Shown: piece after piece, positions 1 through 21,090 of the stretch
Layout of the letters: each line of letters begins with the position of its first letter
How positions within the stretch are numbered: the first letter of the stretch is position 1
Assembly (NCBI GenBank): GCA_001643675.2
Contig: LSRY02000008.1
Location: 1,116,001 to 1,180,000, forward strand
DNA length: 64,000 nucleotides
Reading direction: 5' to 3'
Source of the DNA: Monocercomonoides exilis PA203
Taxonomy: Eukaryota; Protista; Preaxostyla
The notes under the pieces: model-generated
Database searches by the model: none
Seen by the model: only the letters and a program-made list of their open reading frames with translations
What the model was told of the DNA's origin: nothing
Program-made: the position numbers and the translations under genes

Positions 1-859
1 TGATGGATGGATGACTGATGCACTGTTTGCTCGCTATGCTGAAGAGATACTACTGCCTGGAATTGTCCGAAGAAGAAAATTGCTGGATATGTACGAAGAT
101 AGATGCATGCTTCTCTTGGATTCTCATCCTTCAAAAGCACAGCCAGATATTTGGCAAAAATTTGCAGATTCATCAATTGACGTGGTGACATTTATTCCAC
201 ACAGCACTCATCTTACACAGCCACTTGACTGCGGAGTTTTTGCTGTGTTCAAAAGATGTTTCAATTCAAACTATGTTGTTCCATCTTCTTCTTCGATCGC
301 ACTCAGACGAAAAGCAGTTGCAAATGCCTTGCCACAGGCTTTGCAAACTGCATTGCTTCCTTCATCAATTCACTCTGCATTTGAAAAGAGCGGAGTGTTG
401 TCTGGGCAGTCCAATACTGTATTGGTGAAGTTGCCTGACACTCCTTCAGTTCAGCTGAAAAAAAAAACCCATCGTTTCAATTTCCATGGAAAAAATATTA
501 CCGACCAAGCATTTTTAGATGAATGGAAAGAATACAAAAAGATGAAAGATGAAAAGAATATTGATGATTCTGCTGAAGAAAAAATTGAAAAAGATTTGTT
601 TTCTGAGGACAAGCCGAAAAAAAGAAAAATATCAAAATCCCAAATTTTAAAAGATGATGATTTTGAAGATGATAATGAACGAAGAAATACCAGAAAAATT
701 ATTAAAAGAGAATTGATGGATTATATTTACTATTGATTGTTGCGTTTTTTCGAAAATTTCAACATGCGATTTATAAAAAAATATTTTTTTTTCTATCAAA
801 AAATAAAAATTATGTCCGGATAAAAAAATCACCCTATAAAATTATAGGTTGGACACCCT
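1..859 (+). mobile_element. Right part of a pogo/Tc1-mariner superfamily DNA transposon
   Basis: The transposase ORF is followed by a candidate terminus ...ATAGGTTGGACACCCT|TA (860-861). On the reverse strand this is TA|AGGGTGTCC, resembling Tc1/mariner ends. The left TIR is not in the window, so the end is unconfirmed. Confidence 0.55.
2..736 (+). CDS. pogo/Tc5-type DDE_1 transposase, C-terminal part (5' end outside window)
   Basis: The frame is open from the window edge and reads DGWMTDALF...LLLDSHPSK...VVTFIPHSTHLTQPLDCGVFAVFK. This matches the GWM, LLxD.H.S and P.S/T..LQPLD..F..FK motifs of DDE_1 endonucleases. Confidence 0.88.
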   Translation, partial: DGWMTDALFARYAEEILLPGIVRRRKLLDMYEDRCMLLLDSHPSKAQPDIWQKFADSSIDVVTFIPHSTHLTQPLDCGVFAVFKRCFNSNYVVPSSSSIALRRKAVANALPQALQTALLPSSIHSAFEKSGVLSGQSNTVLVKLPDTPSVQLKKKTHRFNFHGKNITDQAFLDEWKEYKKMKDEKNIDDSAEEKIEKDLFSEDKPKKRKISKSQILKDDDFEDDNERRNTRKIIKRELMDYIYY

Positions 860-2873
860 TATTTATTAACCAAACAATAAATGAATGTTTTATTGCCCTT
901 CGTCTTGCCTGTTTTGAGGCAAAAGAATGAAAACGTTGCAGAGGAATAAGTTAATGATTGTGCATCTTCAGGCATTTTATAATATTTTTGACTCTTTTGA
1001 AGTAGATGTTCCTCCAACATTCAGAAAATGAATCAATATGTTGCTTCATCTTGATTTTTCCGAAGGCAGCAGGACCAGCAACAAATGTTTTATGGTGTGC
1101 ATGGGGCATTGCTGAATCACTGCTTATGCGATTTTATCTGTTCTTTTTTTATTATTATGAAAAAAGAAATTTTTTGTTGACTTTTGAAAGGGGCTTGGGC
1201 GATTGAACAATTTGAGGGACCTGGAGCAAAAAGAGAAAAGCGAAGAAATGGATGAAATACGGGAAGATGTGAGATTTGAAGAGACGTGTGCGATTTGTGG
1301 AGTGGGTTGTTGAAAAGATAATAGAGAAAATTGTGGATGGAAAGGGATTGGAGTTGGAGGATGAAAATTGTGTGTTGGAATGTTGTGGGATGTTAAAAAG
1401 AGCCAAAGGTTCAAAGGGACGATGGATTGCTTTTCTTTGAAGAGGAAAAGATACAAGAAAAAGAATTTTGATAAAAACAAGAAGAACGAAAAATAAATGG
1501 ATGAAAGACTTCTAATGGAATGTTTGCAATGGAACTTAATTCTGAATGAAGGCCTTTCAGTGGAATTGGTGTTGATTTGTGTGGCTTGCCTGCTGAAAGG
1601 TGTGTTGGAGAAAGAAGGAAAGGGAGGAGACTCAAAAAGAAGTTGAAATGAGTTTGCTGCGAGAGTCATTTTCACACAACATTCAAACGTGTCTTTTGTT
1701 TTTTTTCAATTTTTTATTTTTTTTTTTTTTGAAATGTATTTGAATTGAATAGGAAACAGATAGCGAGTGATGTTTGAAGGAAGAAGCAGGAAGCATCAAG
1801 AGGGATCAGAAGCAGCACACTTTGAGTGTACTTGCGAATGGATGAGTTTTGGAGAAATTGATGAAGGGATTGATAAAGTGCAGAGAGATGGGGGAAGTGA
1901 GTGTGAATGAGCTGGGTTTTGGTAGAGAAGATTCAAAAGAAGTGGGAGAGATGGGAAAGGATGTGGATTGGAAGAGAAAATATGATGAGAGGATGAGAGA
2001 AGGGAGAGAATGACTGAACCCTGATGGGTGTGATTGAAAGAAGATGAAGTAGAGGAATTTGAAGAAATCAACATTTTCAGTTTCTGAGGGGAAAGAGGAG
2101 GCAACCACTCAAGAACAGTCAATGAACAGTGGACATCCAATTCAATTGGTATGCATCAATCTGTTTGTTGAATATTTTGTGATTATGTTTTTCTTATCAA
2201 TATGAAGTTCACTTATCAAATACAATATTTTATCTCAATGACAACATCACATGAACCCTTTTCATCATCTTCTTCAGAAACATCATTCAATTGATTGCAC
2301 ATTTCTCTTTTACTTCATTTCTTCTTCTTATTCTTCTTCACCATCTTCTTCTTCATTTAACAAAAATGAAGCAATTCTTCAATTAAACAGTGCTTTCTCC
2401 AAGTATCTTAATTTTTCTGGAAAATGTTTTTTTCATCTTTCAACGTAACTTATGTTTATTCTTTTTCTCTTTCAATAGTGTCTGTTGAATTCTAAAAAAT
2501 TGCTTGTATTGTTTCAAAACCATGATATATTTTGTTCAATTGTCAGATGAATTGATTATTAAACAAATAACAAAAAGTGATGAAATGTTCATGTTATCAA
2601 AAAATGAAAAAGAAATAAAAATTGGAAAATATGTGAACTTCAAAAAAGTTTTTTGAAACATAAAAACAAATTATAAACGATATTAAAATGACAACGAATA
2701 AATGAAATAAAAATTCGATGAAGAAGATGCAGTTTCAGATACATTTTTTAAAGGTGAATTGTTTCTATTTCTTGTCGCGCTGGTGGGCTTTTAGCATTTT
2801 CATGAGTCTTCTTCAGAAATTTCTCAAGCTCGTTGATATTTTTCAAAACATTTTAATGTTGAAATAAATAATA

Positions 2874-3386
2874 TGAATATGGTTTTTCATTTCAAAAAAT
2901 GCATTTTTATTTAATCATAAAAAAAAATATTGAATATATACATATTTATTTTTAAGACTCAATAAAATACAAAAACCAAAAAAAAGACAACATTTCATGA
3001 AAATATGTCAAATTGAAAATCTCGATCACAAAAGTGGTCACTAATTTTTCTTCAGATTTTGCAACAAACAGACATAAAAAGATGTGGGGAAGCGGTTTGT
3101 GCGGAAATCTGAGAAAAAATTAGTGACCACTTTTGTGATCGCCAGTCATTTCAAGTTTCAGTTTTATAATAGTTCCGATCGTTCAACGGATCAAATCTGA
3201 TGAGAACCTTAATAAAAGTGTTTTTCAAAATGACTGGCGATCACAAAAGCGGTCACTAATTTTTTCTCAGATTTCCGCACAAACCGCTTCCCCACATCTT
3301 TTTATGTCTGTTTGTTGCAAAATCTGAAGAAAAATTAGTGACCACTTTTGTGATCGAGATTTTCAATTTGATATATTTTCATGAAA
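2874..3386. repeat. Left TIR: 119-bp outer segment, 159-bp arm (2993-3151), 76-bp loop (3152-3227), inverted 159-bp arm (3228-3386)
   Basis: Read directly. Each arm contains the ~36-bp motif GATCACAAAAGTGGTCACTAATTTTTCTTCAGATTT and a near-exact reverse complement (e.g. 3024-3059 and 3105-3140). Confidence 0.93.
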
Positions 3387-3667
3387 ATTTTCGTTTAGAA
3401 ATATTTATTTATTATTTATATTTTTTTTTCATATATTTCTTTATGATTTATTGTTATTATGTTATTAACATTAGTTTTTATGAGAAACATTTATGCGTTG
3501 ATTTTTGGAAAAAGACAAAAAAATTGTGATTTCAGTTTCCAATATCAATTCATCATTTTGATAAAATCAAATTGCATAAATACTTATTTTTTGTGTGAAA
3601 CATGGTGTTTTTCACCGAAAAAGAAATGTGACTTTTGTTCCATAATAAATTCAGAAAAATAAAAACA

Positions 3668-4702
3668 ATGAATATTTCCAAACCTCAATCGACTCTATAT
3701 TCTCGATACAAAGTATTATGGAAAGAAATTGAACGCATCCGTGGAGATGATGTGGATTCATTGCTTGTCTATCAATTTTACAACTACAGGCAATCATCTT
3801 CAGTAATTAACGATTTGTTGAAGTCATTAAACGGTTTGATTATTATTTTGTCTTGTTTTATATAGAAAAATTTATGGACTGTCATTGTTGTCATTTTCTT
3901 ATTTATTTGCGAATTTTTTATATTCTTTAACAGAATATCACATAAAGCTGCTGGAAGACCTGTCTGTGGTGTTCAACAACGCTCCTTTGCACACTCAGAC
4001 AGTAATGCTGCAAGCGCTTTCCCGCAACACATCATTATCCGATTTACAAGACTATGGATATGATGTCACAGAGGGAAAATTTATTTACGCGAAGCAAACG
4101 CTGAAGAAGAATCAAGGTTTTATCATTCCGCCACAAAAACCTCATCTCCCTTCTTGCAAAAGTGGTTTGTTTTTATTTGAATTTTTTTTGAATAATTTTC
4201 TCTGATTATTTTAGGCTTAAATGAACAGGATTGGGAAAAGGGCAATAGCTGGATGTTAGCCCATTCCACTGAAGCCTCAACTTCTCTTCAATCAGCAAAG
4301 AAAAAGCAGCGAGCTGAGCCAGATTACACAAGATTTATTGATGAAGATGCCTGGGAAAATAAAATTGTTACAGAAAACTCTTCTTCAAATAAAAAACAAT
4401 CTTCTTCTTCTTCGATATCATCTCAACAAAACAAAAAATCTGATACCATTTCACATGAAAATTCTCCTTCTCAAGCTGTTGATGCCCCAATCAGTACTCC
4501 AATAAGAAGAGAAAGTAGCTCGACAAAAAATCAAAATAAAAATTCGAATCACAAACGTCACTCTTCTCCATCTCCAATACCAATTCACAAATTTTTCAAA
4601 ACAAAACAATAATCAACATCTTCTTCTTCTTCTCCTCTTCCTCCTTGTTCTCCTATTCGTTCTTCCTCTTCTTCCTCTTCTTCCTCTTCTTCCTCTTCTT
4701 CC

Positions 4703-4737
<35 letters not shown>

Positions 4738-5014
4738 ATCTTCTTCATCTTCTTCTTCTTCTTCCTCTTCTTCATCTTCTTCATCTTCTTCATCTTCTTC
4801 ATCTTCTTCATCTTCTTCTTCTTCTTCATCTTCTTCATCTTCTTCATCTTCTTCATCTTCTTCATCTTCTTCATCTTCTTCTTCTTCTTCATCTTCTTCA
4901 TCTTCTTCATCTTCTTCATCTTCTTCATCTTCTTCATCTTCTTCTTCTTCTTCATCTTCTTCATCTTCTTCATCTTCTTCATCTTCTTCATCTTCTTCAT
5001 CTTCTTTTTCTTCT

Positions 5015-5049
<35 letters not shown>

Positions 5050-7044
5050 ATCTTCTTTATCTTCTTCATCTTCTTTATCTTCTTCTTCTTCTTCATCTTC
5101 TTCATCTTCTTCATCTTCTTCATCTTCTTCATTTTCTTCATCTTCTTCTTTTTCTTTTTCTTCTTCTTCTTTCTCTTCTTCCTCTTCTTCTTCTTCTTCA
5201 TCTTCTTCTTCTTCTTCATCTTCTTCATCTTCTTCATCTTCTTCATCTTCTTCATCTTCTTCTTCTTCTTCATCTTCTTCATCTTCTTCATCTTCTTCAT
5301 CTTCTTCATCTTCTTCTTCTTCTTCATCTTCTTCATCTTCTTCATCTTCTTCTTCTTCTTCATCTTCTTCATCTTCTTCATCTTCTTCATCTTCTTCATC
5401 TTCTTCATCTTCTTCATCTTCTTCATCTTCTTCATCTTCTTCATCTTCTTCATCTTCTTCTTCTTCTTCATCTTCTTCATCTTCTTCATCTTCTTCTTCA
5501 TCTTCTTCCTCTTTTTATTCTTCTTTTTCTTCTTCTTCTTCTTCATCTTCTTCATCTTCTTCATCTTCTTCCTCTTCTTCTTCTTCTTTTTCTTCTTCTT
5601 CTTCCTCTTCTTCCTCTCCTCCTTCTCCTTCTCCTTCTTCTTCTTCTTCTACTTCTTCTCCTCCTCCTTCTCCTTCTTCTTCCTCTTCATCCAAAAAGCA
5701 ACAAAAAATGACAATCAATTCTTCATTAACTAGCAAGTCTTCTTCATATTCGAGAAATGAAAATGATTGGGTGAGCGAGCAATTGCTTGAATATGTCACT
5801 TCTCCCACTCTTGTTCCTCCACAGGCATTTCAAGATCTTCTATCTTCATTTGCAAAAGACAGCAACACTTCTCCGTCTCCTCAAGACACACATTCAGACG
5901 AAAGTTGTAATTCAAATTGTAAAAATAATATGAATATCATTTCAAATAATTACACAATGAATTTTCTTCCCGCAATTCAATCTCCTTCTTCATCAATATT
6001 TTCGAACAAGAATGAAGATTCCAATTCGTCATCAAAAACAGTGAAAGGCTTGCAAAATCTTGGAAACACTTGCTATCTTTCCTCTCTCCTTCAATGTGTA
6101 TCTTCAATCACTTCACAAAAACAATTAATAATTAAAACCATTTCATTTCAAAACAATTTATCTTCTCGAGTATTGAGTGTTTGTCAACAACTTACCAAAG
6201 ATGGAATGATAGTGCGTTCATGGGTCCCATCACTGATCAACAAATGGGAAGACTTTTGTGGATATAGAAGCAGACAGCAACAAAATGTCATCGAGGCGTT
6301 TGACAATCTTCACCAACTTCTTCAAAAAGATGAGTTAATAAACAAGGATACCTTCAATCCTGTTTTAATCACACATTTCAAATGCCAAAAATGTCAAAAA
6401 ATCACATCACACTTCAATGAAATTTGTTACAATGTCGTTATCAATTCTTCTTCTCCTCACAACGGCCTATCTTCTCTTTTTGCGACTGAAGTTTTAAACG
6501 GAAAGAATTGTGTTTATTGCGATAAATGCAAGGAAAAATGCTGTGCTGCGAGATGGGAGGAAATGGCTGCATTTCCAGAGGTGCTAGCCCTCTGTCATGA
6601 ATGCACTGATTCTGCTAGTTCAGCACCTTCGAGAACATTACTAATGGAAACAAACAGAGTCAATCAACGCACGTTTTGTAAAGGGTTTTCTTCTAAAGAT
6701 ATTCAACATCTTCAAAAAGATAATCAAGAAACCATCATATATCATTTTTCTGGACAAATACTATTCAAACGTCTGGATCGACAAAACGGACATTACATCG
6801 CAGTTGTGAAAAGAAAAAGTGGAATCAATAGTTTTTGGAGTATTTGCAATGATAAAAGTGTTTCTGAATTCGATAGTGACAAATGGAGTTCTTCATGGAA
6901 AGATCTTTACTCACAAGGTTTCACTCCTTCCCTTTCATTTTACACAAAAGAAAAAACAAAGCCAACATTTTCAACAATTCAGTTCGGTGGTTCCTCTTCT
7001 TCATCTTCTTCAAAAACATCTAATAATAACACTTCAAATAGCAT

Positions 7045-7076
<32 letters not shown>

Positions 7077-8449
7077 TATCATCATTCATCACACCACCTC
7101 CTCGAACAGCTTCCATTCCACAACTTTCTTCATCAATAACAACTTACTATGGATTGGAAGCTTTGAAAGAAAGAAGAAAGAAAACGGGCATCTTTTCTCC
7201 CAATGAAAAGAGATTAATCTTCAAGCCCAAGACGAAATTATGGAAAGAGTTTACAGATGAAACAAACATCAAAGTTTCATTATCTCACTTCTACAAACTC
7301 ACCACCAACTTCTCAAAAGCGAAAAGGCGTACTGACCTGTGTGGAATGTGTGAGAAGTTGAGCTATTTGGAGAATAAACTCAAATCTTCACAAAACAAAA
7401 ATGGACTTTCTTCTGCTGAGTTTCATACACTCAAACTTCTTCGTCAACATCGTCTTGTTGCAGAAATGCAACGAAAACATTATCAATCAACAGTTGATAA
7501 TCTGAAAGAGGGAGAAGCAGTCTTCGTCTTCGACTTTAAAGAAAAATGGAAACTCCCCATAAGAAAAAATCAACTTCAACAAGAATTCTTCAATTATCAA
7601 CAAGTCTCTCAATTCACAATCATCTCTCTTCAAAAAATAAAAAATCAAAAAATAAAACGAACATTCAACTTCTTCTCCGATTGCCTTTCAAATGATCACA
7701 GATTTGTTATTGAGTGTCTGGAATCTGTGATCAAAAGACACTTCTTCTCAGACACTCACACTTTTAAGTTCTTCTGCGATTCGGGTCCACACAACCGAAA
7801 TCGCTTCCTTCTTCACTTCATCCTCTCCAAACAATCGAAACTCCTGAAAAAGAAAAATACTCAACTCAACTTCTTCGCTGAGCACCATGGAAAGAATATT
7901 TGTGATAGTGAATTTGGTGCGTTAGTTAATGCAATTGACAACAATCTTTCGACTGAACACATCACAACACTTCATGACTTAATCAACTTCTTCGAAAACA
8001 ATACGAATGTTTCATCATCTGTTTCATCATCTTCGCAATTGTATATTTTTGAATCATCCTCATCAAACAACTCCCCATCGTCATCATCTATCAAGGAGTG
8101 TGTACATGAGAGGTACTTTGAAGAGTACGTACCATCTCAGCAAATTTCATGGCCATCACTGTCAGTCCCTCACATGAAGGACTACTTGTATTTTGAGTGC
8201 AAGGGCTCATTTGTCTGCGCATCTGCTGTTGGATATCTTCCTCAACGCTCTCTGGTTGCCCTCGAATCTTCAACAATGAAAGAAAAAGTTCAACGTCCAA
8301 GAAAGTCATTTCACTCTGATATCACATCATCTAACTCTTCTCTTCTTTCTCAATCTTCTCAAGATCTTCTTCCAAGGAGATTTGAGCTTCTTCTTGACTC
8401 TTCTTCTTTTAATGAATCTCAAAATTGTATTTATGGTGTCTCTTTTTAA
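3668..8449 (+). CDS. Transposase (Sola-like DDD) with internal poly-Ser tract and USP/peptidase C19 domain; join(3668..3833,3934..4164,4215..8449), one in-frame TAA at 4610-4612
   Basis: Two phase-1 GT-AG introns (3834-3933, 4165-4214) join the ORF-track pieces in frame. USP motifs: Cys box GLQNLGNTCYLSSLLQC (Cys 6071), QQNV, CxxC/CxxC, His box NGHYIAVV (His 6791), WxxCND. Transposase motifs: RTDLCGMC...H...A, VFDFKEK (D 7532), FCDSG (D 7778), FFAEHHGKNICDSEFG (D 7904). Confidence 0.82.
4619..5690 (+). repeat. ~1.07-kb (TCT/TCA/TCC)n trinucleotide tract encoding poly-Ser in the transposase frame
   Basis: The Ser frame is the same frame as ORFs 4253..4612 and 5708..8449. The Phe/Ile and Lys/Met ORFs in the track are shadow frames. 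Confidence 0.9.
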
Positions 8450-8474
8450 GAAACTAGTTGTTGTGTATGCTTAG

Positions 8475-8570
8475 CTGGCACTCTATCGGAAGGGTGCTGG
8501 ACATGACTGTTCGTATTAGATATTGCAGCCTTCGGGCTGCTTTATCCGGACCTGGATACAACGAACAGCC
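8475..8570 (+). ncRNA. Putative structured RNA element in the transposase 3' region
   Basis: A 10-bp stem 8475-8484/8491-8500 has 3 G-U pairs. Stem 8507-8514/8561-8568 encloses GCAGCC-UUCG-GGCUGC (8525-8540) and a second hairpin (8543-8558). The segment is a GC-rich island in AT-rich DNA. Confidence 0.5.
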
Positions 8571-9346
8571 TCCCAGGTGCACAATAGTTAGAATCCGATT
8601 GTTTTCTTGTAATTTTTGTCCCTATAATGTCCCCATTATTAAATTGGTTATTGTCCCGCTTATATCTGTATATATCGAGATTCATTAGAAGAGAGAGTTA
8701 TGAGGGAATTCATTGATCTATGTGTGAGGTTTTTGGAAGGGAGAGTTGTTGAGAGTGTGAAGTGATGTTTTATCATTGTGTCTGTCTTTTTTCTTTGTTG
8801 AATTTGATCTTTTTGAGTCAAAGAGAGAGAAATATCAGAAAGGGGAGAGTGGATGGAAAACAGATGGAAAATAGACAAGTTAGTTTTTGAACTTTTAATA
8901 TAAGTATTCTTTTTTGTTAGGAATTGTCTTTGATACCATGAATTTGTTGAAATAGTGCTATTTCTTCTTATATTTTTCATTGTTCAAAATTGTTGATATT
9001 TAGTTGATATTTGGTGATTGTTTAATGATAATGTGATTGAATTATGTTTCTTTTGAAAGTTGATGAATCTGATTAGAAAATTTCTGACTGTTTTCAATTT
9101 TTTTAATGATCAATATTGTGAAGTACTTTTTGTTTTTTATGTCATTTTGATTGCAAAACGATTGTTATTTTTTAACGTATATTTTTCACTTTTCATAGTG
9201 AATTTTTCCACTTGTTCACCAAACAATTTATCGATAAACATGTTATATATTTATTAAGATATCAACAAAAATAAAATTTTCATAATAATAGATAATATTA
9301 CAAAACAAATTTCAATAATATCTCATCATACAACAAAAAGCAAATA

Positions 9347-9859
9347 TTTCATGAAAATATATCAAATTGAAAATCTCGATCACAAAAGTGGTCACTAATT
9401 TTTCTTCAGATTTTGCAACAAACAGACATAAAAAGATGTGGGGAAGCGGTTTGTGCGGAAATCTGAGAAAAAATTAGTGACCACTTTTGTGATCGCCAGT
9501 CATTTCAAGTTTCAGTTTTATAATAGTTCCGATCGTTCAACGGATCAAATCTGATGAGAACCTTAATAAAAGTGTTTTTCAAAATGACTGGCGATCACAA
9601 AAGCGGTCACTAATTTTTTCTCAGATTTCCGCACAAACCGCTTCCCCACATCTTTTTATGTCTGTTTGTGTGGAAATCTGAAGAAAAATTAGTGACCACT
9701 TTTGTGATCGAGATTTTCAATTTGACATATTTTCATGAAATGTTGTCTTTTTTTTGGTTTTTGTATTTTATTGAGTCTTAAAAATAAATATGTATATATT
9801 CAATATTTTTTTTTATGATTAAATAAAAATGCATTTTTTGAAATGAAAAACCATATTCA
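9347..9859. repeat. Right TIR: arm 9347-9505, loop 9506-9581, inverted arm 9582-9740, outer segment 9741-9859
   Basis: The outer segment is the reverse complement of 2874-2992. The arm-loop-arm cassette matches 2993-3386 at offset 6354. Confidence 0.93.
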
Positions 9860-10069
9860 CATTTAATGACAATTATAAAAGCGACAATAATAGCAATCAG
9901 TGCGATAATTTACATCAAAAATGTGTCAGCCCGCGAATGGAATATCAATGAAAATGAAAAAATTTTAAATACACATTCAGAAATTTATATGAAAGCGATT
10001 CTTTTTTTCATGAGTATTTTTTTGTGATTCAACTCGTAAACATCAAATGCTTGCTGTTCATTTCGTATG

Positions 10070-13000
10070 CAGCACAAGGCACATATTGCAATCTGTTCTA
10101 TGCATCGAACGCAAACTCTGAAGCGAATATAAACCGAATATTAGTGGATGAAAAGCGAGAGACGAACGACACGCTTTTTCGGATGCAAACACAACTGTAT
10201 AATTCTCTCGCAAGTTCCACTTACCGGACAGTCTGTACACATACAATGGGAGAGAGTGTGGCAGCTTTATGGGGTCATATTTTGGATGTAACACATTGCT
10301 GATTCAGATTAGTGTGGTGTAAGCAGTGGAAAAAGAGGAGGCAATGGTTTCATCCAAGGGCTTAACATGACAACTTTAACATGTTCAAATTGACATCGTG
10401 TGTGGCAGATGCGCTGGAGAAGGAGAAGATCATCCGGCCGAATGAGATTGTGATTGTGGAGCAGACGCAGTGCATGTCACTTGAAGAGGAGGTATTTGAA
10501 GAGGCGAAGCTTGATGCGCCCAGAACAGTTAACTTTGTGTACCAGCAAGTGAATACAGCTATTTTCGGTAAATTTTAGTTTTTTTCTTTCAAGATTGCCT
10601 GGATTTTCGAAGGAGAGGGAGGTCAGGAAAACAGAAAAGAAGAAAAGCAAAATATTTTGAGCTTGATTAAAGAAAAGAAAAAAATTTCAAACAGATCGTC
10701 TTATGCAATGGTGAAGATTTGAAGCAATGTGGTATGTTAAAATTTTCTTTTAATCATTGCAAATAATTTTTGTGTATTTATTTTAATATATATTTTTTTT
10801 TCATTTTTGTAATTTTTAGTACTTTTTTTTCATTATTCATTATGAACTTCCTCTTTTTCTCGTGAGTTGATCGCAACGGCCATTTTATGAATTTGTACGT
10901 TGGCAACATGCATCGAATTGCCTGTCTGAACTGTATCTGCATTGATATCATTGATGCGCTTGATCTTTCCAGCTGTTTGGACTCACACAATTAACAACCA
11001 ATAAGTTTCGTGCAAGAAGTGATGAAAGAGCAATTTTTCATTTTATAAGGTTTGCACTATTTTTCGATAATTGTTACAATTGTTTAAATCATATTTCTTA
11101 TTTTTCTTTTTTTAACTTTTTCAAACTCTAATTATTATTTATTCAATCAATTAATACAAAAAAATATGAACCATCCCTTTTCATGTTTTTATTTCATTCA
11201 ACCTTTTCTTCTAAGTTTGGGTGATGTGTCTTTTCCATGTGCTCTTTCCAGCGTTTTTATTGCCATTGGAAACAGAACAGATAAAAAAGACTGAACAAGG
11301 AGTTATCTACCCCACTCTATCTGCTTCCACTGCTATTACAGTGACACAGCTGACTGCATCCTCCCCGCGCACACCGACTTCATCTCCTCATAAGCTACTC
11401 GAAATTAACTCTCTTCATCATCATCGCCTTGTTCTTCTTCTCCTTTCTGAGATCAGTCATCCGCAAGCAGCTTTGATGCTTCCATGATTGAGTCAATTAA
11501 GCGCCCTTCATATTCAGCAAACATCCTTTCATATTTCTAACAAGAGACCTCCTCTTCTGCTTCACCGCCAATTATGTTTTGAGAATATTTCTTCTCCATG
11601 AACCTTCAGATCTCCTTCTCCTCTTCCTCTCAACAGTTCCATTTGGTATCGATACTTTGTATTAGCTCCCACAAAATGCTCTCTTGCATATTACAATCTC
11701 TTTTGATGGCATCTCTTTCATGAACTTCATCGCAGCAACAACCAAAGCTGAAAAATGCTCACACAGCACGGACCTTAACGAATCTTCAACGTCTTCCAAC
11801 TCATCAAAATGTTCTTTTTCTTCTTTGATGTCCTCCTCCTACTGAAGGGATATCAATAAACAGATCGCTTTATTCTGTCCATCGTAATAAACCACTTTCA
11901 CGTCTGTTTCTTGCTCCTAAATAAATAAAGTTGTCTCTTTCTGCCTTTCCACTACCGCTGCTGGGCTTGTGTTCTTCAAATTTGAGATTTGCCCCTTCGT
12001 GTGTATAATCTGCAGAAGTCAACATTAACTTAAGTGGAGCTTCCAATTCTTCTTCTGAAGGAACAAACTATTTATCCTCTTTGAAGCATCAATAGATGTT
12101 TGGGTTGGATGAGAGGCAATGCTCCTGCTCTTCTTGTCTCGCATTATAAGTCGACAACTCCTCTTATGGAGCGTGTTGGATGCAAATATGGGAACCCATT
12201 TACAAATAAACCACAGATAGGGAAACGGGGTCATTTGCGTTGCATAACTACAATCTCCTGTGAAAGTTTCAGATGGGAAAAAGAATTCGTTATTGTTCCC
12301 GTACGAGATATTCGTTAACGATATGGAGGTTATTTGGAGAAAGAAGGAGAAAGAGAGAAGGAGAGAAAGATGGAGACTTCAATAGAATAGGAAATGAAAA
12401 TGACAAAAGAAGATTCTCGCCTTTGGAGATATACGGAGAAACCTTATTGAGTTATTCATCTTCCTCATCTTCCTTATTGAAGGCAAAGACGCTTAAGCGT
12501 TTAACAGGAGGAAAAGAATTATTTATTATAAGAGATGCAAAGACAAGGACTGATTATCCTGTGACAACTTCACGTGACTGCCTATTGTCTTCGATGTCGT
12601 CTGAGCGGAAGTGAAACAGAGATATCATGCACTCAATTGCAAAGAAGAGAGACAAAAGAGGAAGTGGCAGCAGAGGGGAAGTGAGCGGGACTTGGAAAAA
12701 AAAAAGTTTTGTGTTCTCCTTCAACCACTCATTATCGGGAAATGTGCAGCTCCTCTCTTCGCATGTTCTGCCAACTGCATCGTCAGCTGCATCTTTTATA
12801 GCATTATTTATTTCTTTGTCCAAGCTCATCGTTTCGTCTTCTGCTAATTCCGTCGTTTGCATCAGGCAAGCATCTGGAAATACATCCTCCTCTTCACATT
12901 CTTAACACGACAATAGGAGTAACTTAGCGGAATTACTGAATTATCAATTTTCCGTCTCTCCTTCCTCAAAGATTCTTTTTGCAGGATAGCCTTCATTCTC

Positions 13001-16000
13001 TTTCATCTGATCGCTCAAATCCTGGTCACCTAAGTGGTAATAAAATGTTAGAAAGATTGCGTTATCCATACGAAAACCGTCTATCTTATTGTTCTCCTCC
13101 TCTTCATCTTCCTCATCTTCTCCAGCAGAAACAGAATTCTCTATCCATCCAAAACCGCCTCATCGTTCTGAAATTGCTATGGCTCGCAGCATAAGAGCAA
13201 TGCATCCTCTCCTCCGCCGACGCCATCTCAATCGCTGTGCGCAAGTAGCTGCTGCTTCTAGCGCTTCACGTTCTTCTTCTTCTTCCTCTTTTTCCTCTTC
13301 CTCTTCCTCTTCCTCGTTGCTTCGCTCTTCTAGAAACAGATTTCTGACAAGCGAAGAGCAGCAGATGAGGAAGATGCAGCAACAGTTCGGAAGAAGAAGG
13401 AAAAAACAATATTTTGTTCTCCCTCCCGATGTGTTTGAGGCGCTGCCGCTGTTTGCAGAGTTTCGGATAGTGGAGCGGTATGCGGAGAATCTGGAGAATA
13501 GGAAGAAGTTGAAGTCGATAAAGATGACTGAAAAGAAGAGGATCAAGAAGTGATTTTGGAGGATTCAAAGAACAACCGCAAAGAAGTTGCTTTTAAAGCA
13601 AAGACAATAAAAAAGAAGCAGAAAAGAATACAAAAGCAAAAGAATCTTTACAAAACGACATTAAAGGAGAAACGAACAATGATGAGCCATAATTAGAGCC
13701 TTTTTCATAGGAAAAGCAGAAAAAACAACTCCCTTTCCCCCACCTTCACATTCACCTTCTCCTCAACCTATGCAATACTCTACAGAACGAGGCGCCTTTG
13801 GAACAATACACTTTACGCGAGGGAAGCGAATGGACGGTGGATGAAGAGGAGTCGGAGGGAGAGCGTTGATTGCGTACAGCCAAGAGATGGAGATGGGAAG
13901 AGGAGCTGTTGGTGCTCCGACAACTCCGCTATCACCTGCTGTTGGAGGAGGAGGAATAGGAATTGGAATAGGAGGAGGAGGAGGAGGAGGAGGAGGGGGA
14001 GGAGGAGGGGTGACGTTGGGTGTGATGGGGATGAAGGATTTGAACAAAGAAGTGACAAGGGCGATGCAAGATGAGTTTCAGAATGGGAAAGGGAAAGTGG
14101 ACGATGAAGATTCGAAGGTTACGTTTTATTCATTGGAATTTGATGATCAGAGAGAAAAACTATTTCTGCTGATGAAGCTACAGGAAATACAAAAGAAGAA
14201 GGAGAAGGAGAAAGAAGAAAAAGAGAGGAGGCTGAAGAAGAAAGAAGAGAGAGAACTCAGGAAAATGGAGAAAATGACGAAGAAGATAGAGGAAAAAGAC
14301 AAGAATCTGTTTAGCAGCGTCCAAGAAATATTACAATCACACCTTGGGACAGGCACACAGATCAACCAGAAGGGGAACAAAATGGCAAGCGATGCGCCAC
14401 AAGAGGCGAAAGAAAGCAAAACGCCAATTTTGACAAGAGAGCGGAAATTGGACTGAACGCTGAATGATTTAGCGAATTCTGACCTGGAAGATTTGAGCGA
14501 TGAACTGGATGTGCCTTTCCGCTATGTGCGAATCAAAAGCGAGGAAAATGGGCAATTTGTGTTAAAGATGCGGAAAATGCCTGTGTTAGCAGCAGTCGAC
14601 GCGAGGCAGACCAGAACGCGGTTGGATCTAATGAGCGCACTGAAGAGCGGCTTGAGACAGAGCAGGGCGGAGTTGAGAAGAGGAAGAGGGATGAAGTGGA
14701 GGGGCTGGTGGTCGCACAAAGAGGAAGCAGAAGTGACACACAGGAAGGGAAGGAAAGGAGCAGGGAAAGGATCACCTTTTCTGTTCCAGAAGGAGAAAGG
14801 GAAAAGAACATTCAGTCAGAGCAGCGTGTATGGAATAAAAGATGTGATGTCAAAACTGTTTTCTTCGATGTTGTTCTCAAAATTGAAGTCTTTCTTCACG
14901 TAGCAGAATTCAATGGCAATGGATCTGATGCAGAAATACCCTGCCCTTAATTTGGTTGCGCCTTTTGATTCAGCTGCAGATTTTTCTGCAAATACAAACA
15001 TTGCTCTTCATCCTCTTTCTCATTGTCCTTCATCACTTGTAAATTCGTCATTGTTTATGAACGTCCAACAACAATCTTCTCCTTCTCTTTCATTCCACTC
15101 TCCCTCAAGTTTTGTCTCTTCGCTTCATCAATCTTCATTTCTCACAACAGAAAAAAGAACTCAATTTCTTCTGTTGGCCCTGAAGACTTTGGATGCTCAT
15201 CTCAAAAAGGATCACAAAATAGACTCAGAATCACCAGCTCTTTCAACCTCTTCACCAAGTTCGGGTGCTTCTTCTCCCGCTATTCAACCTCAGTCCATTC
15301 CTATTCGAACGAAGGAAAATGAAAAATCCGCAACTCAGCAAACTTCTTCTTCTTCTTCGTCTTCTTCGTCATCATCTTCATCTCCTGGTTGTGCCTCTGC
15401 TTCTTCTGCTTCAACTCCTCATGCTATTCGTCCACTTGCCCTGGAAAGAGGGAAAAGTCCTTCGACTCCAAACAAACTGCACCTTTCTTCGTCTGCACAA
15501 ATCGCATTTGATCCTTTGGATGCTGTCAACCAGGAGAAAGAACAAGTGCAAAAGACAGAAACAAACAGAAAAGAGGTTTCACCAAAAGAACAAGCAGGAA
15601 ATCTTCCTATTGAAAATGTGAATGAATCAGGAGTTGTTCAAAAGAGGCCATTGATTTCAGATGCGTTGCTTCCGCGTTCCAGTTCAAGGCATTCGTTTCC
15701 TGTGTATCCTGTTCCCTCTCAACAGCAAGCAGTCGCAAAGAAAAAGAAAACTGCTTCAATGCTGTCACCAAAACCGCAGCGCCTGCGAAGAGAAATGTGG
15801 CTGGGTGAACTGATAAAAGAGTGGCTTGTGTATGAAGATGCTGACCAGGATGCGTGGAATGAGATGAGAGAGGCTGCTGCAAAGGAGAACGAGGAAGGGT
15901 TTGAGTCTGAAAGTTGCAGTGATGATGAAGAGGAGGAAGATGTGGGAGATGAGGATGGAGCTGAACCGAAAGATAGATGAGAAGAATGCTTTGACAAGCG

Positions 16001-18100
16001 TAATGAAGATAAGCAGAATGATTCTTGAAATGGAGAGAAAAGAAGAAGTTTTGAAAAGGTTCTATTTGAAGCTGAAGCAGAAAGCGTAAGAGAACAAAAA
16101 TGATGGATGGGATTTTTTTGAGGCTTGTGAAAAGAGAAACATATTCAGAAATGAGAACAAATACAGGAAGAAAAGAAAGTGGAAGTTTCAATTCTTTAAG
16201 TTTGAGTTAGAAGACCCTGTGAAAAAGCAGAAACATTTTTTTATGAACAATTTAATGTTCTGTTGGAAAACGTTGTGGAATAGTTTGAAAATACATTGAC
16301 AGCGAAGAATGAAAAAAGTTTTATTCAACCGGAAGACAAATATCATCCAGCTTTTTGCTAAGAAGCAATGGAAGATGAAGCTTAAGTTTAAAGAAACAGC
16401 TCAGAGCAGGAAAAGGATGAGGAGAGAAAAGATCAGTGTGCATGTGGAGAATAATCTGTACAAGAAAAGAGAATAATTTTATTAAGCCCATTATGCGATG
16501 AATGAGAAAGAGAAAGAAAAAAAGGCTTCAACATGAAAATTATTTTCAGTAAGAGAAAAATGGAAATTTCTAAAGTAAAGTTGACAGAATGAGCCATTTG
16601 GAGTTATTTGATTAAGGCAGAACATCTCTTGTAATTCCTTCCTGCTGAAATGGCTGTCATATGGAAAATTAGTGGAACACAAAGACTATTTGGGTTTTAT
16701 TTCGCAATGAAGATAAGCAGAGGTAGGCAATGCGAACTTAATGGAAGGTGCTAAAGAGGAGATGGACTATTTTTTGTGGAGGACGAAGAGAACGAAGAGA
16801 GAAGGAAAAGCGAGCTGAGAGTGCTATATGGCAGCTCGTCAGAAGAATCGAAATCAGTTTGAAGAAAGCAGGTGCGCTTGTGATACGTCTTCAGTGATTT
16901 TATCATTATCATCATCATCTTCTTCTTCTTCTTCTTCAAAGCCTCACTCACACTCTCATTCCTCAAAGTCATCTCATTCAAAATCCAGCTCGTCAACAAC
17001 AACCTTATCTCCTTCCTCAACAGCTGTACCAACTGCATCATTATCATCACCTTCTTCTTCAACTTCTTCTATTTCATCTTCTTCATCAGCCTCTCAAAAT
17101 ACATCTGTTATCAAACAATTTTGTCATCCCCTCCAGCCACTTGCACAGACACACAAGAAGCACAGCGATCGCACCCTCAAACCGATCTCTATTACATATC
17201 CACTCTCGACTCTCTCGCAAAATGCAGCTGAAATCAAAAAACAGAAAAGGAAGCCAGCATCAAGTCAGTAGAGGAACTCATCTCTATCACCATCTTCTTT
17301 GATGTCATCTTCTTCCACTGCTTTTTCCTATCCATCTTCATCTTCATTGTCCTCTTCTCCATCTTCAAGTCTGCTCTCTTATTCTGTTTCTTCCAAAAAG
17401 AAAACTGAGAATGGAAATGAAAAAGAAAAGAAAAGAAAAGCGAAAATGAAGCCAAAATAGCAGAAACTCACGGCTCTTTAACAATAACTCACGATGAAAA
17501 CGAAGATGATGCAGAGGATCAGCCAAATGGTATTATTACTTCTCATCAAAATGCCTCTTCGAAACCAGATAGAAAAGTATTTCCATCTTCTTCAGTATAA
17601 ATTCGACTGACTATTTCGACATCGTCTCCATATTCAGACTCAGTTATATATTCTTCTTCTTCTTCGTTTTCTTCCTCTTCCTCTTCTTCTGTTCTTCAAG
17701 AAATACAGTGCTCGCTCCATTTCACTCTTCCTTCTCTTCTCCACCACTGGGTCGGCTGTGCTGAGACTTGCGGGCAGAGAAGCACGATGGAAGACAGAGT
17801 GTTGATGCTGCCTGTTGATGGATGGGGCATAGAGAAGCTTGTGTGCGACGGAAAAGAGGGGATTTTGGCTTGCATACTGAAATATCCGCAGGAGCTGAGG
17901 TTCACTGAGAAAGGAATGAAGGCACTGGAAGACAGAGAGGCTGAGATCTGGGCAAGGAGTATAAGAGAGAAGGAGAGAAGGAGAGAAAGAAGAAGGAAAG
18001 AATGGAAAGAAAGAGAAAAGATTGGAGAAAGAAAATAGAGAAAGGAAAGAGAAAGAAAAGAAGAAGAGGATGATAAATCCAGAAATAAGCTAAATACAAA
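10070..18100 (+). pseudogene. Fragmented large Ser/Glu/Lys-rich hypothetical gene(s), unrecognised family
   Basis: A chain of + strand protein-like ORFs (10381, 13089, 13866, 14493, 14913, 16828, 17787) broken by stops and frameshifts. No domain recognised; boundaries approximate. Confidence 0.4.
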
Positions 18101-19199
18101 CATAGAAGCAAGTGATGTTGAAATTAACTCACAAACGTTGCCTTCATCTTCTCTTTCGTCGTCATCTTCTTCTTCTTCAACTCCTCCAACTTTTTCAATG
18201 CCATCTTCACTCACTTGGAGTTGAATCAGAATTTCAACCATCTGTTGCATTTATTCCATTCAATTCGATAGAGCCACAAAATTGAACGGAAAATTGTTTC
18301 ATTTCCTTTCCTTCGTCTCTTCAGTCAATCGATAAAAGAGCTTTCTTTTCATTTTTCAATCACGATTCTAATGATGAAAAAAGGCAATTTGAATGAATTT
18401 ATTTGATTTCATTCAAATCAACTTCTTCTTCAACTCCTTCTTCGATGAACAACAAAACTGAAACTGTTTTTTTCATTTCATTCAACTCCCGTTAAATTCA
18501 GTGCCAGACCTCATCTATCGTTGCTCTTTGGAAGCACAAACAAATACTCATTCTTTCACGGAATAACAGCTAATGTTATTTTACAAAGGAAGTTGTACAA
18601 TGTTTAACCAAGAAAAACTGATCATCAGGCATTCAACAGAAAATGGAGATCGAATCTGACTTTTTTGATTTTGAAGATCAAGCATCTGAAGTGAAAAGGA
18701 AATGGTATTGAAGCAATTCATTTATGAAATGGATGTGTTCCTAAATAGCCTTCTGCAGATTACACAGATACGAAACTGGAGCAAATAGTAGAAAAGGAAA
18801 AGAAAAGGAAAATCTTGAAGAGCATGCTGATATGAAAAGAAATGATATGAATTCTATCGCTAATTGGATACGAACAAGTTGAAATCGGAAAGGTGAAGAA
18901 AATATAAACTGAAGAAAATTGCCTGATATACATGAACATATTTCTTTTGAAGATACGACAGCAATGAATCTTTTTTCATGAGCTTAATTTGTAGTTGATG
19001 GAGAAGAAAAATTAGATGAGGTAATGACGAAGAAATATTTTTGTCTTGTTGATGGTATGGATTTTGATAAAATAAGTGTTGATAAATGCTTCAGTTGAAT
19101 GTGATATGAAACCTCAAGGATGTTTCAATGATATGGAAAAAGTTGAAAATTGGAAAATGAAAGTAATAATAAACGTATTAGAAAAAGATCATAACAATA

Positions 19200-19386
19200 A
19201 GTGATTTTTGTGTCAACCGCGTTGAAGGTGAGTGTTTGAGAAGGAATAAATATTAAGGTGAGGAAGGTGAGGGAGGAGTCTTTGAGGAGGGAAATGAAGC
19301 CAGTGAGGGCATACTCGATGGTGGCACATGGGGTCTGTTGTCTGCCACAGGCATCAGCATCTGTTTTATTGTTAGCAACAGTTTTA
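19200..19386 (-). pseudogene. Isolated fragment of a beta-helix surface-protein family member
   Basis: The minus strand reads KTVANNKTDADACGRQQTPCATIEYALT, the D-x3-CG-x4-PC-x-TI motif repeated in the 33493-42558 protein. Confidence 0.55.
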
Positions 19387-20370
19387 TTTTAAGCAAGAAG
19401 ATGGAGACAGCCATTGAATTTGGCTTAATCCAATATACAGCTTTATCTGTTTCTGTTTGATTTATCCGATGAATCGAATAAAAGGAATGGAGATTTGTTG
19501 GCTATTCAAAGGTGAGGGGAAAAAAAGAAAAATAACAATTATAGTAAAATTGGTTTCAATAGTATTGTTTTCTTTTTTTCATTTATATTCTTCTTTGTAA
19601 ACTTTTTCTTTGCAATATTTTGTTTTACCAATTATGAAATTTCAGTTAACCTTTTAAAGATAGGTTTTTCAATTTTTTACTCTTTTTAAAATGAACTTGA
19701 TCAACAAATCTTTTTCACAAAAAACATAAAAAGGTATGCTTTTTTTTATATTAATAAACAAAATACACATAAAACATAGCTTTAAAAGCTAAATGCAATA
19801 AAAAAATCAATTTGACTCTTTGATCAATAAATACCACAATAGAATTTATTTTTTCGATTTTTGATCTTTTTTTATGATTTCAAAAAAAATCACCCATATT
19901 TCTTCATATGAATATTTATCTGAATAAAGTTTTTGTGTATCTCTCAGGGCAACAGGCGGAAATGAAAGAGATATGGTATTCCCGCTATGGATCCATCTCG
20001 ATTAGGTCATTCAATAATATCGATTTATGAATATCATGTTGTAGTTATCATCTTGAATTATAAGTTGAATAGGCAATGATTATAAGATAGAGATCGAGAG
20101 TTGTTGCTGATATTCTTAGGGGGTTATCATGATTTGATTTTCAGTGAAGTTCGATACAGAAGGAGTTATTGATAAGTGTTATCAAGATATATCTATTGCC
20201 GATATTCCATATCTCCAAGAAGAAGAATTAGCTAAAAGATTAACTGAAAGATTAACTGGAGTTGTGTTCAAGTTGGTAAATAAGTGGTGAATTTGTGTGT
20301 TATCGTTGGTGTGATCGTTGATGGAAATCGCAAATAAAAATAATTGATTTTGTTTTTTGTTTTATAGTAA

Positions 20371-20589
20371 ATGGGTTGGAAGAAGATATACGCAACTGTG
20401 GAAGAAGCTAAAGCGGCTTAACAGAAACAAATTAAACAGTTTCAGGAAAAACGCAAAGAAGAAACTATGTATTACAACGAACATGTTACTGAAAAACAGA
20501 AGAAGTTGATTAAGATATTGAGGAGAAAGCTTATCGAAAATGATGAGCTGTTAGATGAGTAGACAGAAAAGTTAATGGTTATTGCCTGA
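20371..20589 (+). pseudogene. Small basic/coiled-coil ORF of the helicase element (mirror at 31095-31313, minus strand)
   Basis: MGWKKIYATVEEAKAA*QKQIKQFQEKRKEE...LLDE*TEKLMVIA*. Protein-like with two internal stops; convergent with the helicase gene. Confidence 0.5.
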
Positions 20590-21090
20590 ACAAGCTTGAT
20601 TGGGATAAATGTGTTAATTAATGAAATATAACTGACTGAACACGTTAATTGAATCGTTGATTGTTAAGGACAGTGGTCCATGATGATGTTATAGTTGATT
20701 TCCAACAACAATATTTTTTGAACAAATGGCATTGTTGTGGATCGCCAACGTCTATATTTTTCCTCGGAAAAAGTGTTAATCGGAAGTCAGGATACCAAAT
20801 TTTGGAAATATCGAGATGCTTGGGGAAGGGAAATATTTGCTAAATCTCTGTGCTGGAAGCGTACACTAGTGTCCTGGTGGACTGGATCTTTTAATTTCAT
20901 CTGAAAAGAGCTGCCAACATTCCATTTCTGCTAACATGGATGCTTTTCCCTTTATTTGGCATGACTTTGAGGGTTTTTATTTATTTTCGACTGTATCATC
21001 ATTTTGACACATTGCCACGTGGTATCGTTGGTAGCACACATCAGTTGTATTGTTTTTGTAATAATGATTTCCAAAAAAAAACGAATATGT

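What the first reader, a model, noticed from the sequence alone, without database searches (positions are those of the whole stretch)
2874..9859. Nested-hairpin TIRs with a flip-flopped loop
Seen: each 513-bp TIR contains a 159-bp/76-bp/159-bp palindrome, and each arm is itself a hairpin. This gives four alternating copies of a ~36-bp motif per end. The outer segments and an outer SNP (G3007/C9726) are inverted between ends, as expected for TIRs. The 76-bp loop and an inner SNP (C3250/C9604) are instead in direct orientation, so the loop of one end has been inverted by exchange within the arms. Established: such isomerism is known from parvovirus/AAV hairpin termini and invertible switches. 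Inference: the ends may extrude branched cruciforms, pass through hairpin intermediates, or behave as an invertible segment next to the transposase promoter (ATG ~280 bp from the left TIR).
Basis: partly seen in the sequence, partly recalled or inferred. Interest (0 to 1): 0.8.

Follow-up and report, generated by a model that had tools for sequence, protein, structure and literature searches.

The report
Flipped loops in transposon inverted repeats
In the protist Monocercomonoides exilis, a transposase gene cassette is bracketed by two 513-bp inverted repeats, each holding a highly conserved palindrome whose 76-bp centre points either way in different genomic copies; this is most likely ordinary recombination between the palindrome arms, not a programmed switch, and the repeats are not the ends of the mobile element.

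Summary
Window 2874-9859 has 513-bp inverted ends. Each end is an outer 119-bp segment plus a 159/76/159 palindrome with four copies of a 47-nt motif. The outer segments are mirrored (119/119). The loop is in direct orientation (76/76) inside a 308-nt block that is identical in direct register.

1. **Not transposon termini.** The sequence beyond both ends is repeated with the cassette in every copy examined: more than 5 kb on the left, beyond a 2-kb pogo-like insertion, and at least 5 kb on the right. Earlier follow-ups of this scan, on other pieces of this genome, called this cassette family the gene core of giant Sola2-type transposons. They did not note the loop flips.

2. **The flip is real and recurrent.** Among 14 full copies all four isomers occur. 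At least 6 flips map onto the copy tree, and close sister copies mostly share their state.

3. **Other products of the same repeats exist.** One cassette is inverted relative to its flanks, and there are cassette-less solo palindromes.

4. **The arms co-evolve.** Twenty mirrored double substitutions were counted. The palindrome is the slowest-evolving part of the cassette.

Best reading: homology-driven exchange or gene conversion in the arms, on an evolutionary timescale. No recombinase was found.

The parts
2874..2992 (+). Outer segment O of the left inverted repeat; mirrored at 9741-9859
   Evidence: 119/119 complementary to 9741-9859. 29 matches in the genome.
2993..3152 (.). O-proximal palindrome arm of the left end: motif, 25-nt spacer, inverted motif
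   Evidence: Arm-to-arm complementarity is 97.5% in this end.
3153..3228 (+). 76-bp loop of the left palindrome, state A (same strand as O). This is the derived, flipped state in this clade.
   Evidence: 76/76 direct identity with 9507-9582. The 3' ends of all clade relatives are state B, while the 5' ends vary.
3229..3386 (.). Interior-proximal palindrome arm of the left end
3008..3315 (.). Block 100% identical in direct register to 9362-9669; it contains the flipped segment
   Evidence: It is bounded by the mirrored outer SNP (3007/9361) and by the 3316-3319/9670-9673 difference.
3668..8449 (+). Cassette gene: three conserved upstream exon-like frames (3668-4609), an expanded TTC/9-nt repeat (about 4610-5700), and a 913-aa ORF (5708-8449). 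The ORF has a USP/UCH domain (aa 114-392) and an RNase H-like DD(D/E) transposase domain (aa about 500-780).
   Evidence: Pfam UCH E 7e-12. 659 relatives of the C-terminal domain. Invariant D140, D222, D264 and CxxC. AF2 pLDDT 82.6. Foldseek top hits are Hermes, IstA and Mos1. Exon frames are open in most copies.
9347..9506 (.). Interior-proximal palindrome arm of the right end
9507..9582 (+). 76-bp loop of the right palindrome, state B (opposite strand to O')
9583..9740 (.). O-proximal palindrome arm of the right end; carries a private GTGG variant at 9670-9673
9741..9859 (-). Outer segment O' of the right inverted repeat
836..2873 (+). Left arm of the larger repeated unit, co-repeated with the cassette. 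In this copy it is interrupted at 836 by a pogo-like insertion of about 2 kb and resumes at C80:1113308-1113755, outside the window.
   Evidence: At least 16 colinear copies, all starting at query position 835/836. Other copies continue at least 1.5 kb further left. The upstream piece was located.
9860..15000 (+). Right arm of the larger repeated unit, colinear with the cassette in other copies; its far end was not determined
   Evidence: Colinear matches 1-4365 at 89-91% in C63, C8 and C53, continuing to the end of the query. Also.
1..836 (+). 3' part of a pogo/Tc5-like transposon inserted into the left arm; not part of the feature
   Evidence: Pfam DDE_1 E 3.8e-10. At least 20 separate copies in the genome.

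Best explanation
Window 2874-9859 is the gene cassette of a much larger repeated unit in Monocercomonoides exilis. Earlier follow-ups of this scan call that unit a giant Sola2-type DNA transposon.

The cassette encodes a USP-deubiquitinase/DD(D/E)-transposase fusion. It is bracketed by inverted repeats of 513 to about 676 bp, and each repeat contains a palindrome of about 394 bp (159-nt arms, 76-nt centre).

A palindrome pairs with itself, and with any other copy of itself, in two registers. Homology-driven events in the arms therefore invert the centre. Such events could be:
- intrachromatid non-allelic recombination;
- template switching at a hairpin or cruciform during replication or repair;
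- gene conversion from the other end or from another copy, taken in the 'wrong' register.

In this copy the central segment of the left (5') end was inverted. That segment is at least 122 bp and at most 364 bp, with exchange points between 3007-3129 and 3250-3372.

Shown: the anatomy, the isomers, the exchange brackets, the co-evolution of the arms, and the non-terminal position.

Inferred: the recombination route, the absence of a dedicated enzyme, and the view that the flip itself is neutral. The strong conservation of the palindrome suggests it is a cis-acting site, for example for transposase binding or for expression of the cassette gene. That function works in either orientation and is untested.
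For: - **Isomers.** 14 full copies were scored, with states given 5'/3' relative to the gene: A/B x2, B/A x2, A/A x5, B/B x5. Gene direction is unknown for one A/A pair (L035+L036) and one B/B pair (L044+L045).
- **Recurrence.** At least 4 flips at the 5' end and 2 at the 3' end on the copy tree. L033 (A/B) differs from L031/L032 (B/B) although the three are nearly identical in the USP half.
- **Speed.** The sister pairs L031/L032 and L039/L040 share their states. The 3' state carries phylogenetic signal (p 0.026). The process is therefore slow.
- **Exchange inside the arms.** Two SNPs private to this copy occur at both ends. The outer one is mirrored and the inner one is direct.
- **Arm co-evolution.** 20 of 158 arm-to-arm pairs show mirrored double changes. 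Median arm-to-arm complementarity is 95.6%.
- **All predicted recombination products of this repeat layout are present.**
  - Loop flips.
  - A cassette inverted relative to its flanks: L034 against its sister L037.
  - Seven solo 'O-palindrome-O'' units; those whose flanks were compared lie between the same flanks as full copies.
- **Length dependence.** The 25-nt spacer inside each 47-nt hairpin keeps the same orientation in every arm where it was detected. This fits a requirement for long homology.
- **No recombinase.** Pfam finds only UCH in the main ORF and nothing in the three upstream exon frames.
- **Known analogue.** Recombination between palindrome arms inverts the spacer in primate X palindromes, in about 50% of comparisons between species (PMC8327919).
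Against: - A 76-bp centre is too short for two 159-bp duplex arms to synapse easily within one molecule. The simple intrachromatid crossover is therefore mechanically awkward, and the actual route remains open. Template switching and inter-end or inter-copy conversion avoid the problem.
- The palindrome is 93-100% identical between subfamilies whose USP region is 76% identical and whose outer segment is 80% identical. Neutral recombination does not explain this. It points to a function that could include catalysed processing.
- The 5' state is no better than random on the tree (p 0.47), so flipping there may be faster than I assume.
- No reads could be examined.
- Copies are mosaics, so flip counts on a single tree are approximate.
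Confidence: 0.68

Rival explanations
1. The flip is a catalysed or programmed event. One version is a transposase-made hairpin or cruciform intermediate at the motif array, a eukaryotic analogue of parvoviral flip/flop. The other is an invertible regulatory segment next to the cassette promoter. In both cases the loop orientation would be set actively.
For: - The palindrome and its loop are the most conserved part of the cassette.
- There are four ordered motif copies per end.
- The left palindrome lies 282 bp upstream of the conserved first ATG.
- The 5' end flips more often than the 3' end (4-5 against 2), and its state is near-random on the tree.
Against: - The repeats are internal, not physical DNA ends.
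- Pfam found no serine or tyrosine recombinase in the main ORF or the three upstream exon frames.
- The sister pairs L031/L032 and L039/L040 share their states.
- Intact-looking ORFs occur with all four isomers.
- The same palindrome also sits at the 3' end of the gene.
- The ssDNA fold is a plain hairpin.
Confidence: 0.12
2. A and B are two old variants of the end. They were redistributed among copies by recombination or gene conversion between whole ends of different copies, or of the two ends of one copy. They would not arise by repeated inversion in place.
For: - Copies are mosaics. L033 is nearly identical to L031 in the USP half but has a 4% private branch in the transposase half.
- Both ends of a copy share private variants, so end-to-end conversion does happen.
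- In the window, one direct-register conversion tract covering the inner SNP and the loop would explain both the flip and the shared SNP.
Against: - This is still homology-driven exchange within the arms, so it overlaps with the best explanation and does not exclude it.
- It needs at least one original inversion.
- Markers cannot separate the two routes.
Confidence: 0.15
3. The direct orientation of the right-hand or left-hand loop is an assembly or polishing error at this locus.
For: Palindromes in a multi-copy family are hard to polish. Reads could not be checked.
Against: - All four isomers recur in 14 copies, and the sister pairs L031/L032 and L039/L040 agree.
- The private inner and outer SNPs form a coherent pattern of one clean inversion.
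- A read of a few kilobases spans the whole 400-bp palindrome, so long-read consensus should not invert a 76-bp centre.
Confidence: 0.05

Closest known systems
[quoted passage not shown]
   Same: The arms are kept nearly identical, with mirrored substitutions. The spacer is found in both orientations among related copies. The exchange lies inside the arms. Deletions cluster at the centre of symmetry (PMC8327919).
   Different: The scale is 100 to 1000 times smaller: 159-bp arms and a 76-bp spacer. The palindromes come in pairs flanking a transposase gene, are multiplied with a transposon family, and are more conserved than the coding sequence.
Long inverted repeats that flip the segment between them (plastid inverted repeats, herpesvirus genome isomers, yeast 2-micron plasmid)
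   Same: Four isomers arise from two invertible parts. The whole cassette is also inverted in one copy, L034.
   Different: Those systems reach equilibrium within a cell population, and the 2-micron plasmid uses its own recombinase. Here the states are fixed per locus as far as the assembly shows, and no recombinase is encoded.
Parvovirus/AAV and poxvirus flip-flop hairpin termini
   Same: An imperfect palindrome whose asymmetric centre exists in two inverted forms.
   Different: Those palindromes are physical ends of linear DNA and are flipped by hairpin transfer at each replication. Here they lie inside chromosomal DNA, at least 5 kb from any end of the repeated unit, and sister copies L031/L032 and L039/L040 keep the same state.
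Sola2-type DNA transposons with a USP-fused transposase in M. exilis (as classified by earlier follow-ups of this scan) and foldback-type elements
   Same: A DD(D/E) RNase H-like transposase with an upstream CxxC. A USP domain lies in the same ORF. The inverted repeats are long. Short foldback derivatives exist (L061-L063).
   Different: Membership in Sola2 could not be tested here because no reference sequences were available. The repeats studied here bracket the gene cassette, not the element.

Membership tests
Terminal inverted repeats of a cut-and-paste transposon | Inverted repeats at the two borders of the unit | tested here: met
   513-bp repeats. Outside the flipped centre, the ungapped mirrored comparison of 2874-3151 finds only 5 mismatched positions.
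Terminal inverted repeats of a cut-and-paste transposon | The repeats mark the border between repeated and copy-specific DNA | tested here: not met
   Flanks are conserved with the cassette in every copy of each subfamily: more than 3.5 kb of arm sequence on the left and at least 5 kb on the right.
Terminal inverted repeats of a cut-and-paste transposon | Target-site duplication directly outside the repeats | tested here: not met
   No direct repeat at 2873/9860 or at the repeat borders of L043, L038 and L037.
Sola2 superfamily | RNase H-like transposase with a DDD triad | tested here: inconclusive
   Invariant D140, D222 and D264 in 50 relatives. The fold matches Hermes, IstA and Mos1 only weakly. 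7 of 50 relatives touch Pfam DUF7869.
Sola2 superfamily | Sequence similarity to reference Sola2 transposases; 4-bp target-site duplication | not testable with these tools
   No Sola2 reference or profile was on hand; Sola RNase H-like domains have no Pfam match (PMC5751038).
Palindrome with arm-to-arm conversion and recombinational spacer inversion | Arms co-evolve: mirrored substitutions and high arm identity | tested here: met
   20 of 158 pairs have changes on both sides. Median arm identity is 95.6%.
Palindrome with arm-to-arm conversion and recombinational spacer inversion | Spacer in both orientations among related copies, with exchange points inside the arms | tested here: met
   Four isomers and at least 6 changes on the tree. 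Exchange brackets are 3007-3129 and 3250-3372.
Flip-flop hairpin termini (parvovirus, poxvirus) | The palindrome is a physical end of a linear replicon | tested here: not met
   The palindromes are internal to chromosomal contigs and to the repeated unit.
Flip-flop hairpin termini (parvovirus, poxvirus) | Both orientations present in roughly equal amounts within one population | not testable with these tools
Site-specific invertible DNA switch | A dedicated serine or tyrosine recombinase encoded nearby | tested here: not met
   Pfam on the main ORF and the three upstream exon frames finds only UCH. Flank ORFs have no hit except the pogo DDE_1.
Site-specific invertible DNA switch | A fixed short crossover site at the border of the inverted segment | tested here: inconclusive
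   Only a 122-nt bracket could be set in this copy. The other flips lack asymmetric markers.

The most novel reading that the evidence does not exclude
The paired palindromes are functional cis-elements of a giant-transposon gene cassette. They could be inner transposase-binding or hairpin-forming sites, or a bidirectional expression or silencing element. Selection would keep them more constant than the transposase gene itself. Their centres would be inverted by a catalysed, structure-dependent process (cruciform or hairpin processing), giving a eukaryotic chromosomal counterpart of viral flip-flop termini.
Probability: 0.12. Interest if true: 0.8.

Novelty: new variant of a known kind. Interest (0 to 1): 0.45.

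Why it matters
- **A small-scale example of a known process.** Spacer inversion is known from 10- to 100-kb sex-chromosome palindromes. Here it operates on 160-bp arms inside a transposon family. One genome supplies many natural replicates: four isomers, one inverted cassette and several solo products.
- **A correction to the annotation.** These 'TIRs' bracket the transposase cassette of a much larger unit, so annotation that treats them as element ends will mis-size the family.
- **An open question.** The palindrome evolves more slowly than the transposase gene. A cis-acting role is likely and can be tested.

Tried and rejected
- **Reads test.** I did not try another route.
- **True ends of the larger unit.**
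  - No inverted match to the left boundary region was found within window 9860-45000. That boundary later turned out to be a pogo insertion point.
  - A search with window 14200-26000 was swamped by other repeat families.
- **Gene context from public annotation.** The look-up of encoding contigs holds no record.
- **Superfamily naming.** There is no Pfam hit for the transposase domain, only a weak link to DUF7869. The Yuan and Wessler paper is not held.
- **Branched cruciform.** Rejected as the favoured fold.
- **Independent flipping of the 25-nt spacers.** Not seen in any arm where the spacer was detected.
- **Other scans.** The bacterial-type promoter/terminator scan is not meaningful for a eukaryote. 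Rfam found nothing in 1-16000.
- **An oddity dismissed.** All seven solo palindromes have the loop on the minus strand of their contigs. Relative to their flanks they are mixed, so I treat this as chance.
Full report
**What is in the sequence**

- Left end: outer segment O (2874-2992), arm (2993-3152), loop (3153-3228), arm (3229-3386).
- Right end: arm (9347-9506), loop (9507-9582), arm (9583-9740), O' (9741-9859).
- O and O' are perfectly mirrored (119/119).
- The loop is identical in direct register (76/76) and unrelated in mirrored register (22/76).
- The directly identical block runs 3008-3315 = 9362-9669 (308 nt, 100%).

Each arm is motif, 25-nt spacer, inverted motif. The 22-nt motif core occurs eight times in the 64-kb window, against none expected.

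G3007/C9726 stay with the outer side. C3250/C9604, with partners A3129/A9483, travel with the loop.

As single-stranded DNA the end folds into one long arm-to-arm hairpin (dG -196 kcal/mol, z -35.7). Across copies, arm-to-arm complementarity has a median of 95.6%, while the hairpins within the arms reach only about 84%. The 'nested' level is therefore real but decaying, and a branched cruciform is not the favoured form.

**Organism and gene**

The window lies in an 82.3-Mb, 101-contig assembly. The only close protein relatives come from Monocercomonoides exilis, an oxymonad.

The 913-aa ORF (5708-8449) has two parts.
- A USP/UCH domain at aa 114-392 (Pfam E 7e-12).
- A C-terminal domain with 659 relatives in the 1.84-billion-protein library and no Pfam family of its own.

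The C-terminal domain has these features.
- An alignment of 50 relatives shows invariant D140, D222, D264, HGK and an upstream CxxC.
- The AlphaFold model is confident (pLDDT 82.6).
- Its best structural matches are Hermes, IstA and Mos1 transposases. The matches are weak, but all share the RNase H-like fold.
- A language-model search and 7 of 50 relatives point weakly to Pfam DUF7869.

Three upstream frames (3668-4609), beginning 282 bp from the left palindrome, are open in most copies.

Earlier follow-ups of this scan call this protein a Sola2-type DDD transposase with a built-in deubiquitinase. I could not test that name, because no Sola2 reference was available.

**The repeats are not the ends of the mobile unit**

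The DNA outside 2874 and 9859 is repeated together with the cassette.
- Window 836-2873 has at least 16 colinear copies.
- The apparent boundary at 836 is the insertion point of a pogo-like element of about 2 kb (DDE_1).
- Other copies continue at least 1.5 kb further left.
- This copy's own continuation lies at C80:1113308-1113755.
- On the right, colinear homology runs at least to window 15000.
- A second subfamily (L038-L042, L046) has different arms that are likewise shared.
- No target-site duplication sits at the repeat borders.

This agrees with earlier notes of the scan that the 'long-TIR' stretch is the gene cassette of a transposon of about 17-22 kb (s1-470993, s1-470996). I verified only the part about shared flanks.

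**Loop orientation across the family**

I scored each end as A (loop on the same strand as its outer segment) or B (opposite strand), and oriented the copies by the gene.

| State (5'/3' of gene) | Copies |
|---|---|
| A/B | the window copy, L033 |
| B/A | L039, L040 |
| A/A | L034, L038, L041, L042, L035+L036 |
| B/B | L031, L032, L043, L046, L044+L045 |

Gene direction is unknown for L035+L036 and L044+L045, because their interiors were not fetched. All four isomers exist.

- On a tree of 13 cassette ORFs, the 5' state needs at least 4 changes and the 3' state needs 2. Trees of the two ORF halves give 4-5 and 2.
- L033 and L031/L032 are almost identical in the USP half yet differ at the 5' end, so at least one flip is recent.
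- The sister pairs L031/L032 and L039/L040 share their states.
- The 3' state carries phylogenetic signal (p 0.026). The 5' state does not (p 0.47).
- In this copy's clade all 3' ends are B, so the left (5') loop is the flipped one.
- The 25-nt spacers inside the arms keep the same orientation in every arm where they were detected.

**How the flip happened in this copy**

In a loop-normalised alignment, two variants private to this copy are present at both ends. The outer one is in the mirrored arrangement and the inner one is in the direct arrangement.

Either of two events explains everything:
- a single inversion of the centre, with exchange points between 3007-3129 and 3250-3372;
- a conversion tract of that extent, copied from the other end in direct register.

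**Further marks of recombination**

- The arms co-evolve: 20 of 158 arm-to-arm pairs carry mirrored double changes.
- One cassette (L034) is inverted relative to the flanks that its sister L037 keeps.
- Seven solo 'O-palindrome-O'' units exist. Those whose flanks were compared lie between the same flanks as full copies, as expected from exchange between the two palindromes read as direct repeats.
- Several palindromes carry central or arm deletions: L033 5', L032 3' and L037 3'.

**Mechanism**

The simplest account is homology-driven exchange in the arms. The same principle inverts the spacers of sex-chromosome palindromes, where about half of between-species comparisons differ (PMC8327919).

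A 76-bp centre leaves little room for two duplex arms to pair within one molecule. I therefore consider two routes more likely than a classical intrachromatid crossover:
- template switching at a hairpin;
- conversion from the other end or from another copy in the alternative register.

The data cannot separate these routes. Nothing points to a dedicated enzyme: Pfam finds only UCH in the main ORF and nothing in the three upstream exon frames.

**What remains odd**

The palindrome is the slowest-evolving part of the cassette. The figures below are DNA identities between this copy and copies of the other subfamilies.

| Region | Identity |
|---|---|
| Palindrome | 93-100% |
| Transposase half of the ORF | about 90% |
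| Upstream exons | about 82-84% |
| Outer segment O | about 80% |
| USP half of the ORF | about 76% |

Arm-to-arm conversion cannot protect the loop. Subfamily-specific mirrored changes also show that the subfamilies are not simply homogenised with each other. A cis-acting function is therefore likely. It tolerates either loop orientation, and it is untested. This is the basis of the novel reading, to which I give 12%.

**Limits**

I rate the artefact at 5%, because the pattern recurs coherently in many copies.
- Copies are mosaics, so flip counts are approximate.
- The ends of the larger unit and its Sola2 membership rest on earlier, unchecked notes.

Noticed in passing
window 1-836, continuing upstream to about C80:1113756: A pogo/Tc5-like transposon of about 2 kb (Pfam DDE_1) is inserted at a TA in the left arm of the larger unit. 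The junction is unique to this copy and would make a good anchor for long-read tests.
   Followed up: partly
window about 4610-5700: A TTC-rich array with 9-nt periodicity lies between the upstream exons and the 913-aa ORF. In this copy the distance from the left repeat to the ORF is about 770 bp longer than in L031. It is not known whether the array is coding (poly-Ser) or intronic.
   Followed up: no
L034 (C8:603100-611200) against L037 (C63:233200-241100): Sister copies in the same flanks, with the whole 6-kb cassette in opposite orientation. This is the product expected from exchange between the long inverted repeats.
   Followed up: partly
L053 (C80:918499-919067), L047 (C53:67384-68016), L051 (C17:511225-511854), L052, L055, L056, L057: Cassette-less solo units of about 570-630 bp (outer segment, one palindrome, outer segment). 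Those whose flanks were compared sit between the same flanks as full copies. They resemble solo LTRs, but arise from palindromes read as direct repeats.
   Followed up: partly
L061:817-1759 (C42:283916-284858): A 943-bp foldback with 450-nt arms (99% complementary) and a 43-nt centre. It is built from a divergent outer segment and a single motif-spacer-motif hairpin, lies outside the usual flanks, and has no clear target-site duplication. L062 and L063 are similar loop-less forms.
   Followed up: partly
window 2993-3386 and 9347-9740, against the rest of the cassette: The palindrome is 93-100% identical between subfamilies whose coding regions are 76-91% identical. It is more conserved than the transposase domain at the DNA level.
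   Followed up: partly
window 2772-2873 and 9860-9994: The sequences directly outside the outer segments come in two unrelated versions, X and Y. This copy is X on the left and Y' on the right; L034 and L037 are Y/Y'; L043 is X/X'. The inverted repeat is thus 100-135 bp longer in some lineages.
   Followed up: partly
ORF 5708-8449, compared across copies: The two ORF halves have different histories. The USP half separates the subfamilies deeply (76-93% identity). The transposase half is about 90% identical in all comparisons with this copy and gives a star-like tree, and L033 is mosaic. This suggests recombination between copies.
   Followed up: partly
window 3024-3039 and the other seven motif copies: Each 47-nt motif starts with a mini inverted repeat (GATCAC, four A, GTGGTC). 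This is a third level of nesting and a plausible protein-binding core.
   Followed up: no
window 8475-8570: Another first-stage note flags a structured-RNA candidate just after the stop codon. Rfam finds nothing there at gathering thresholds.
   Followed up: no
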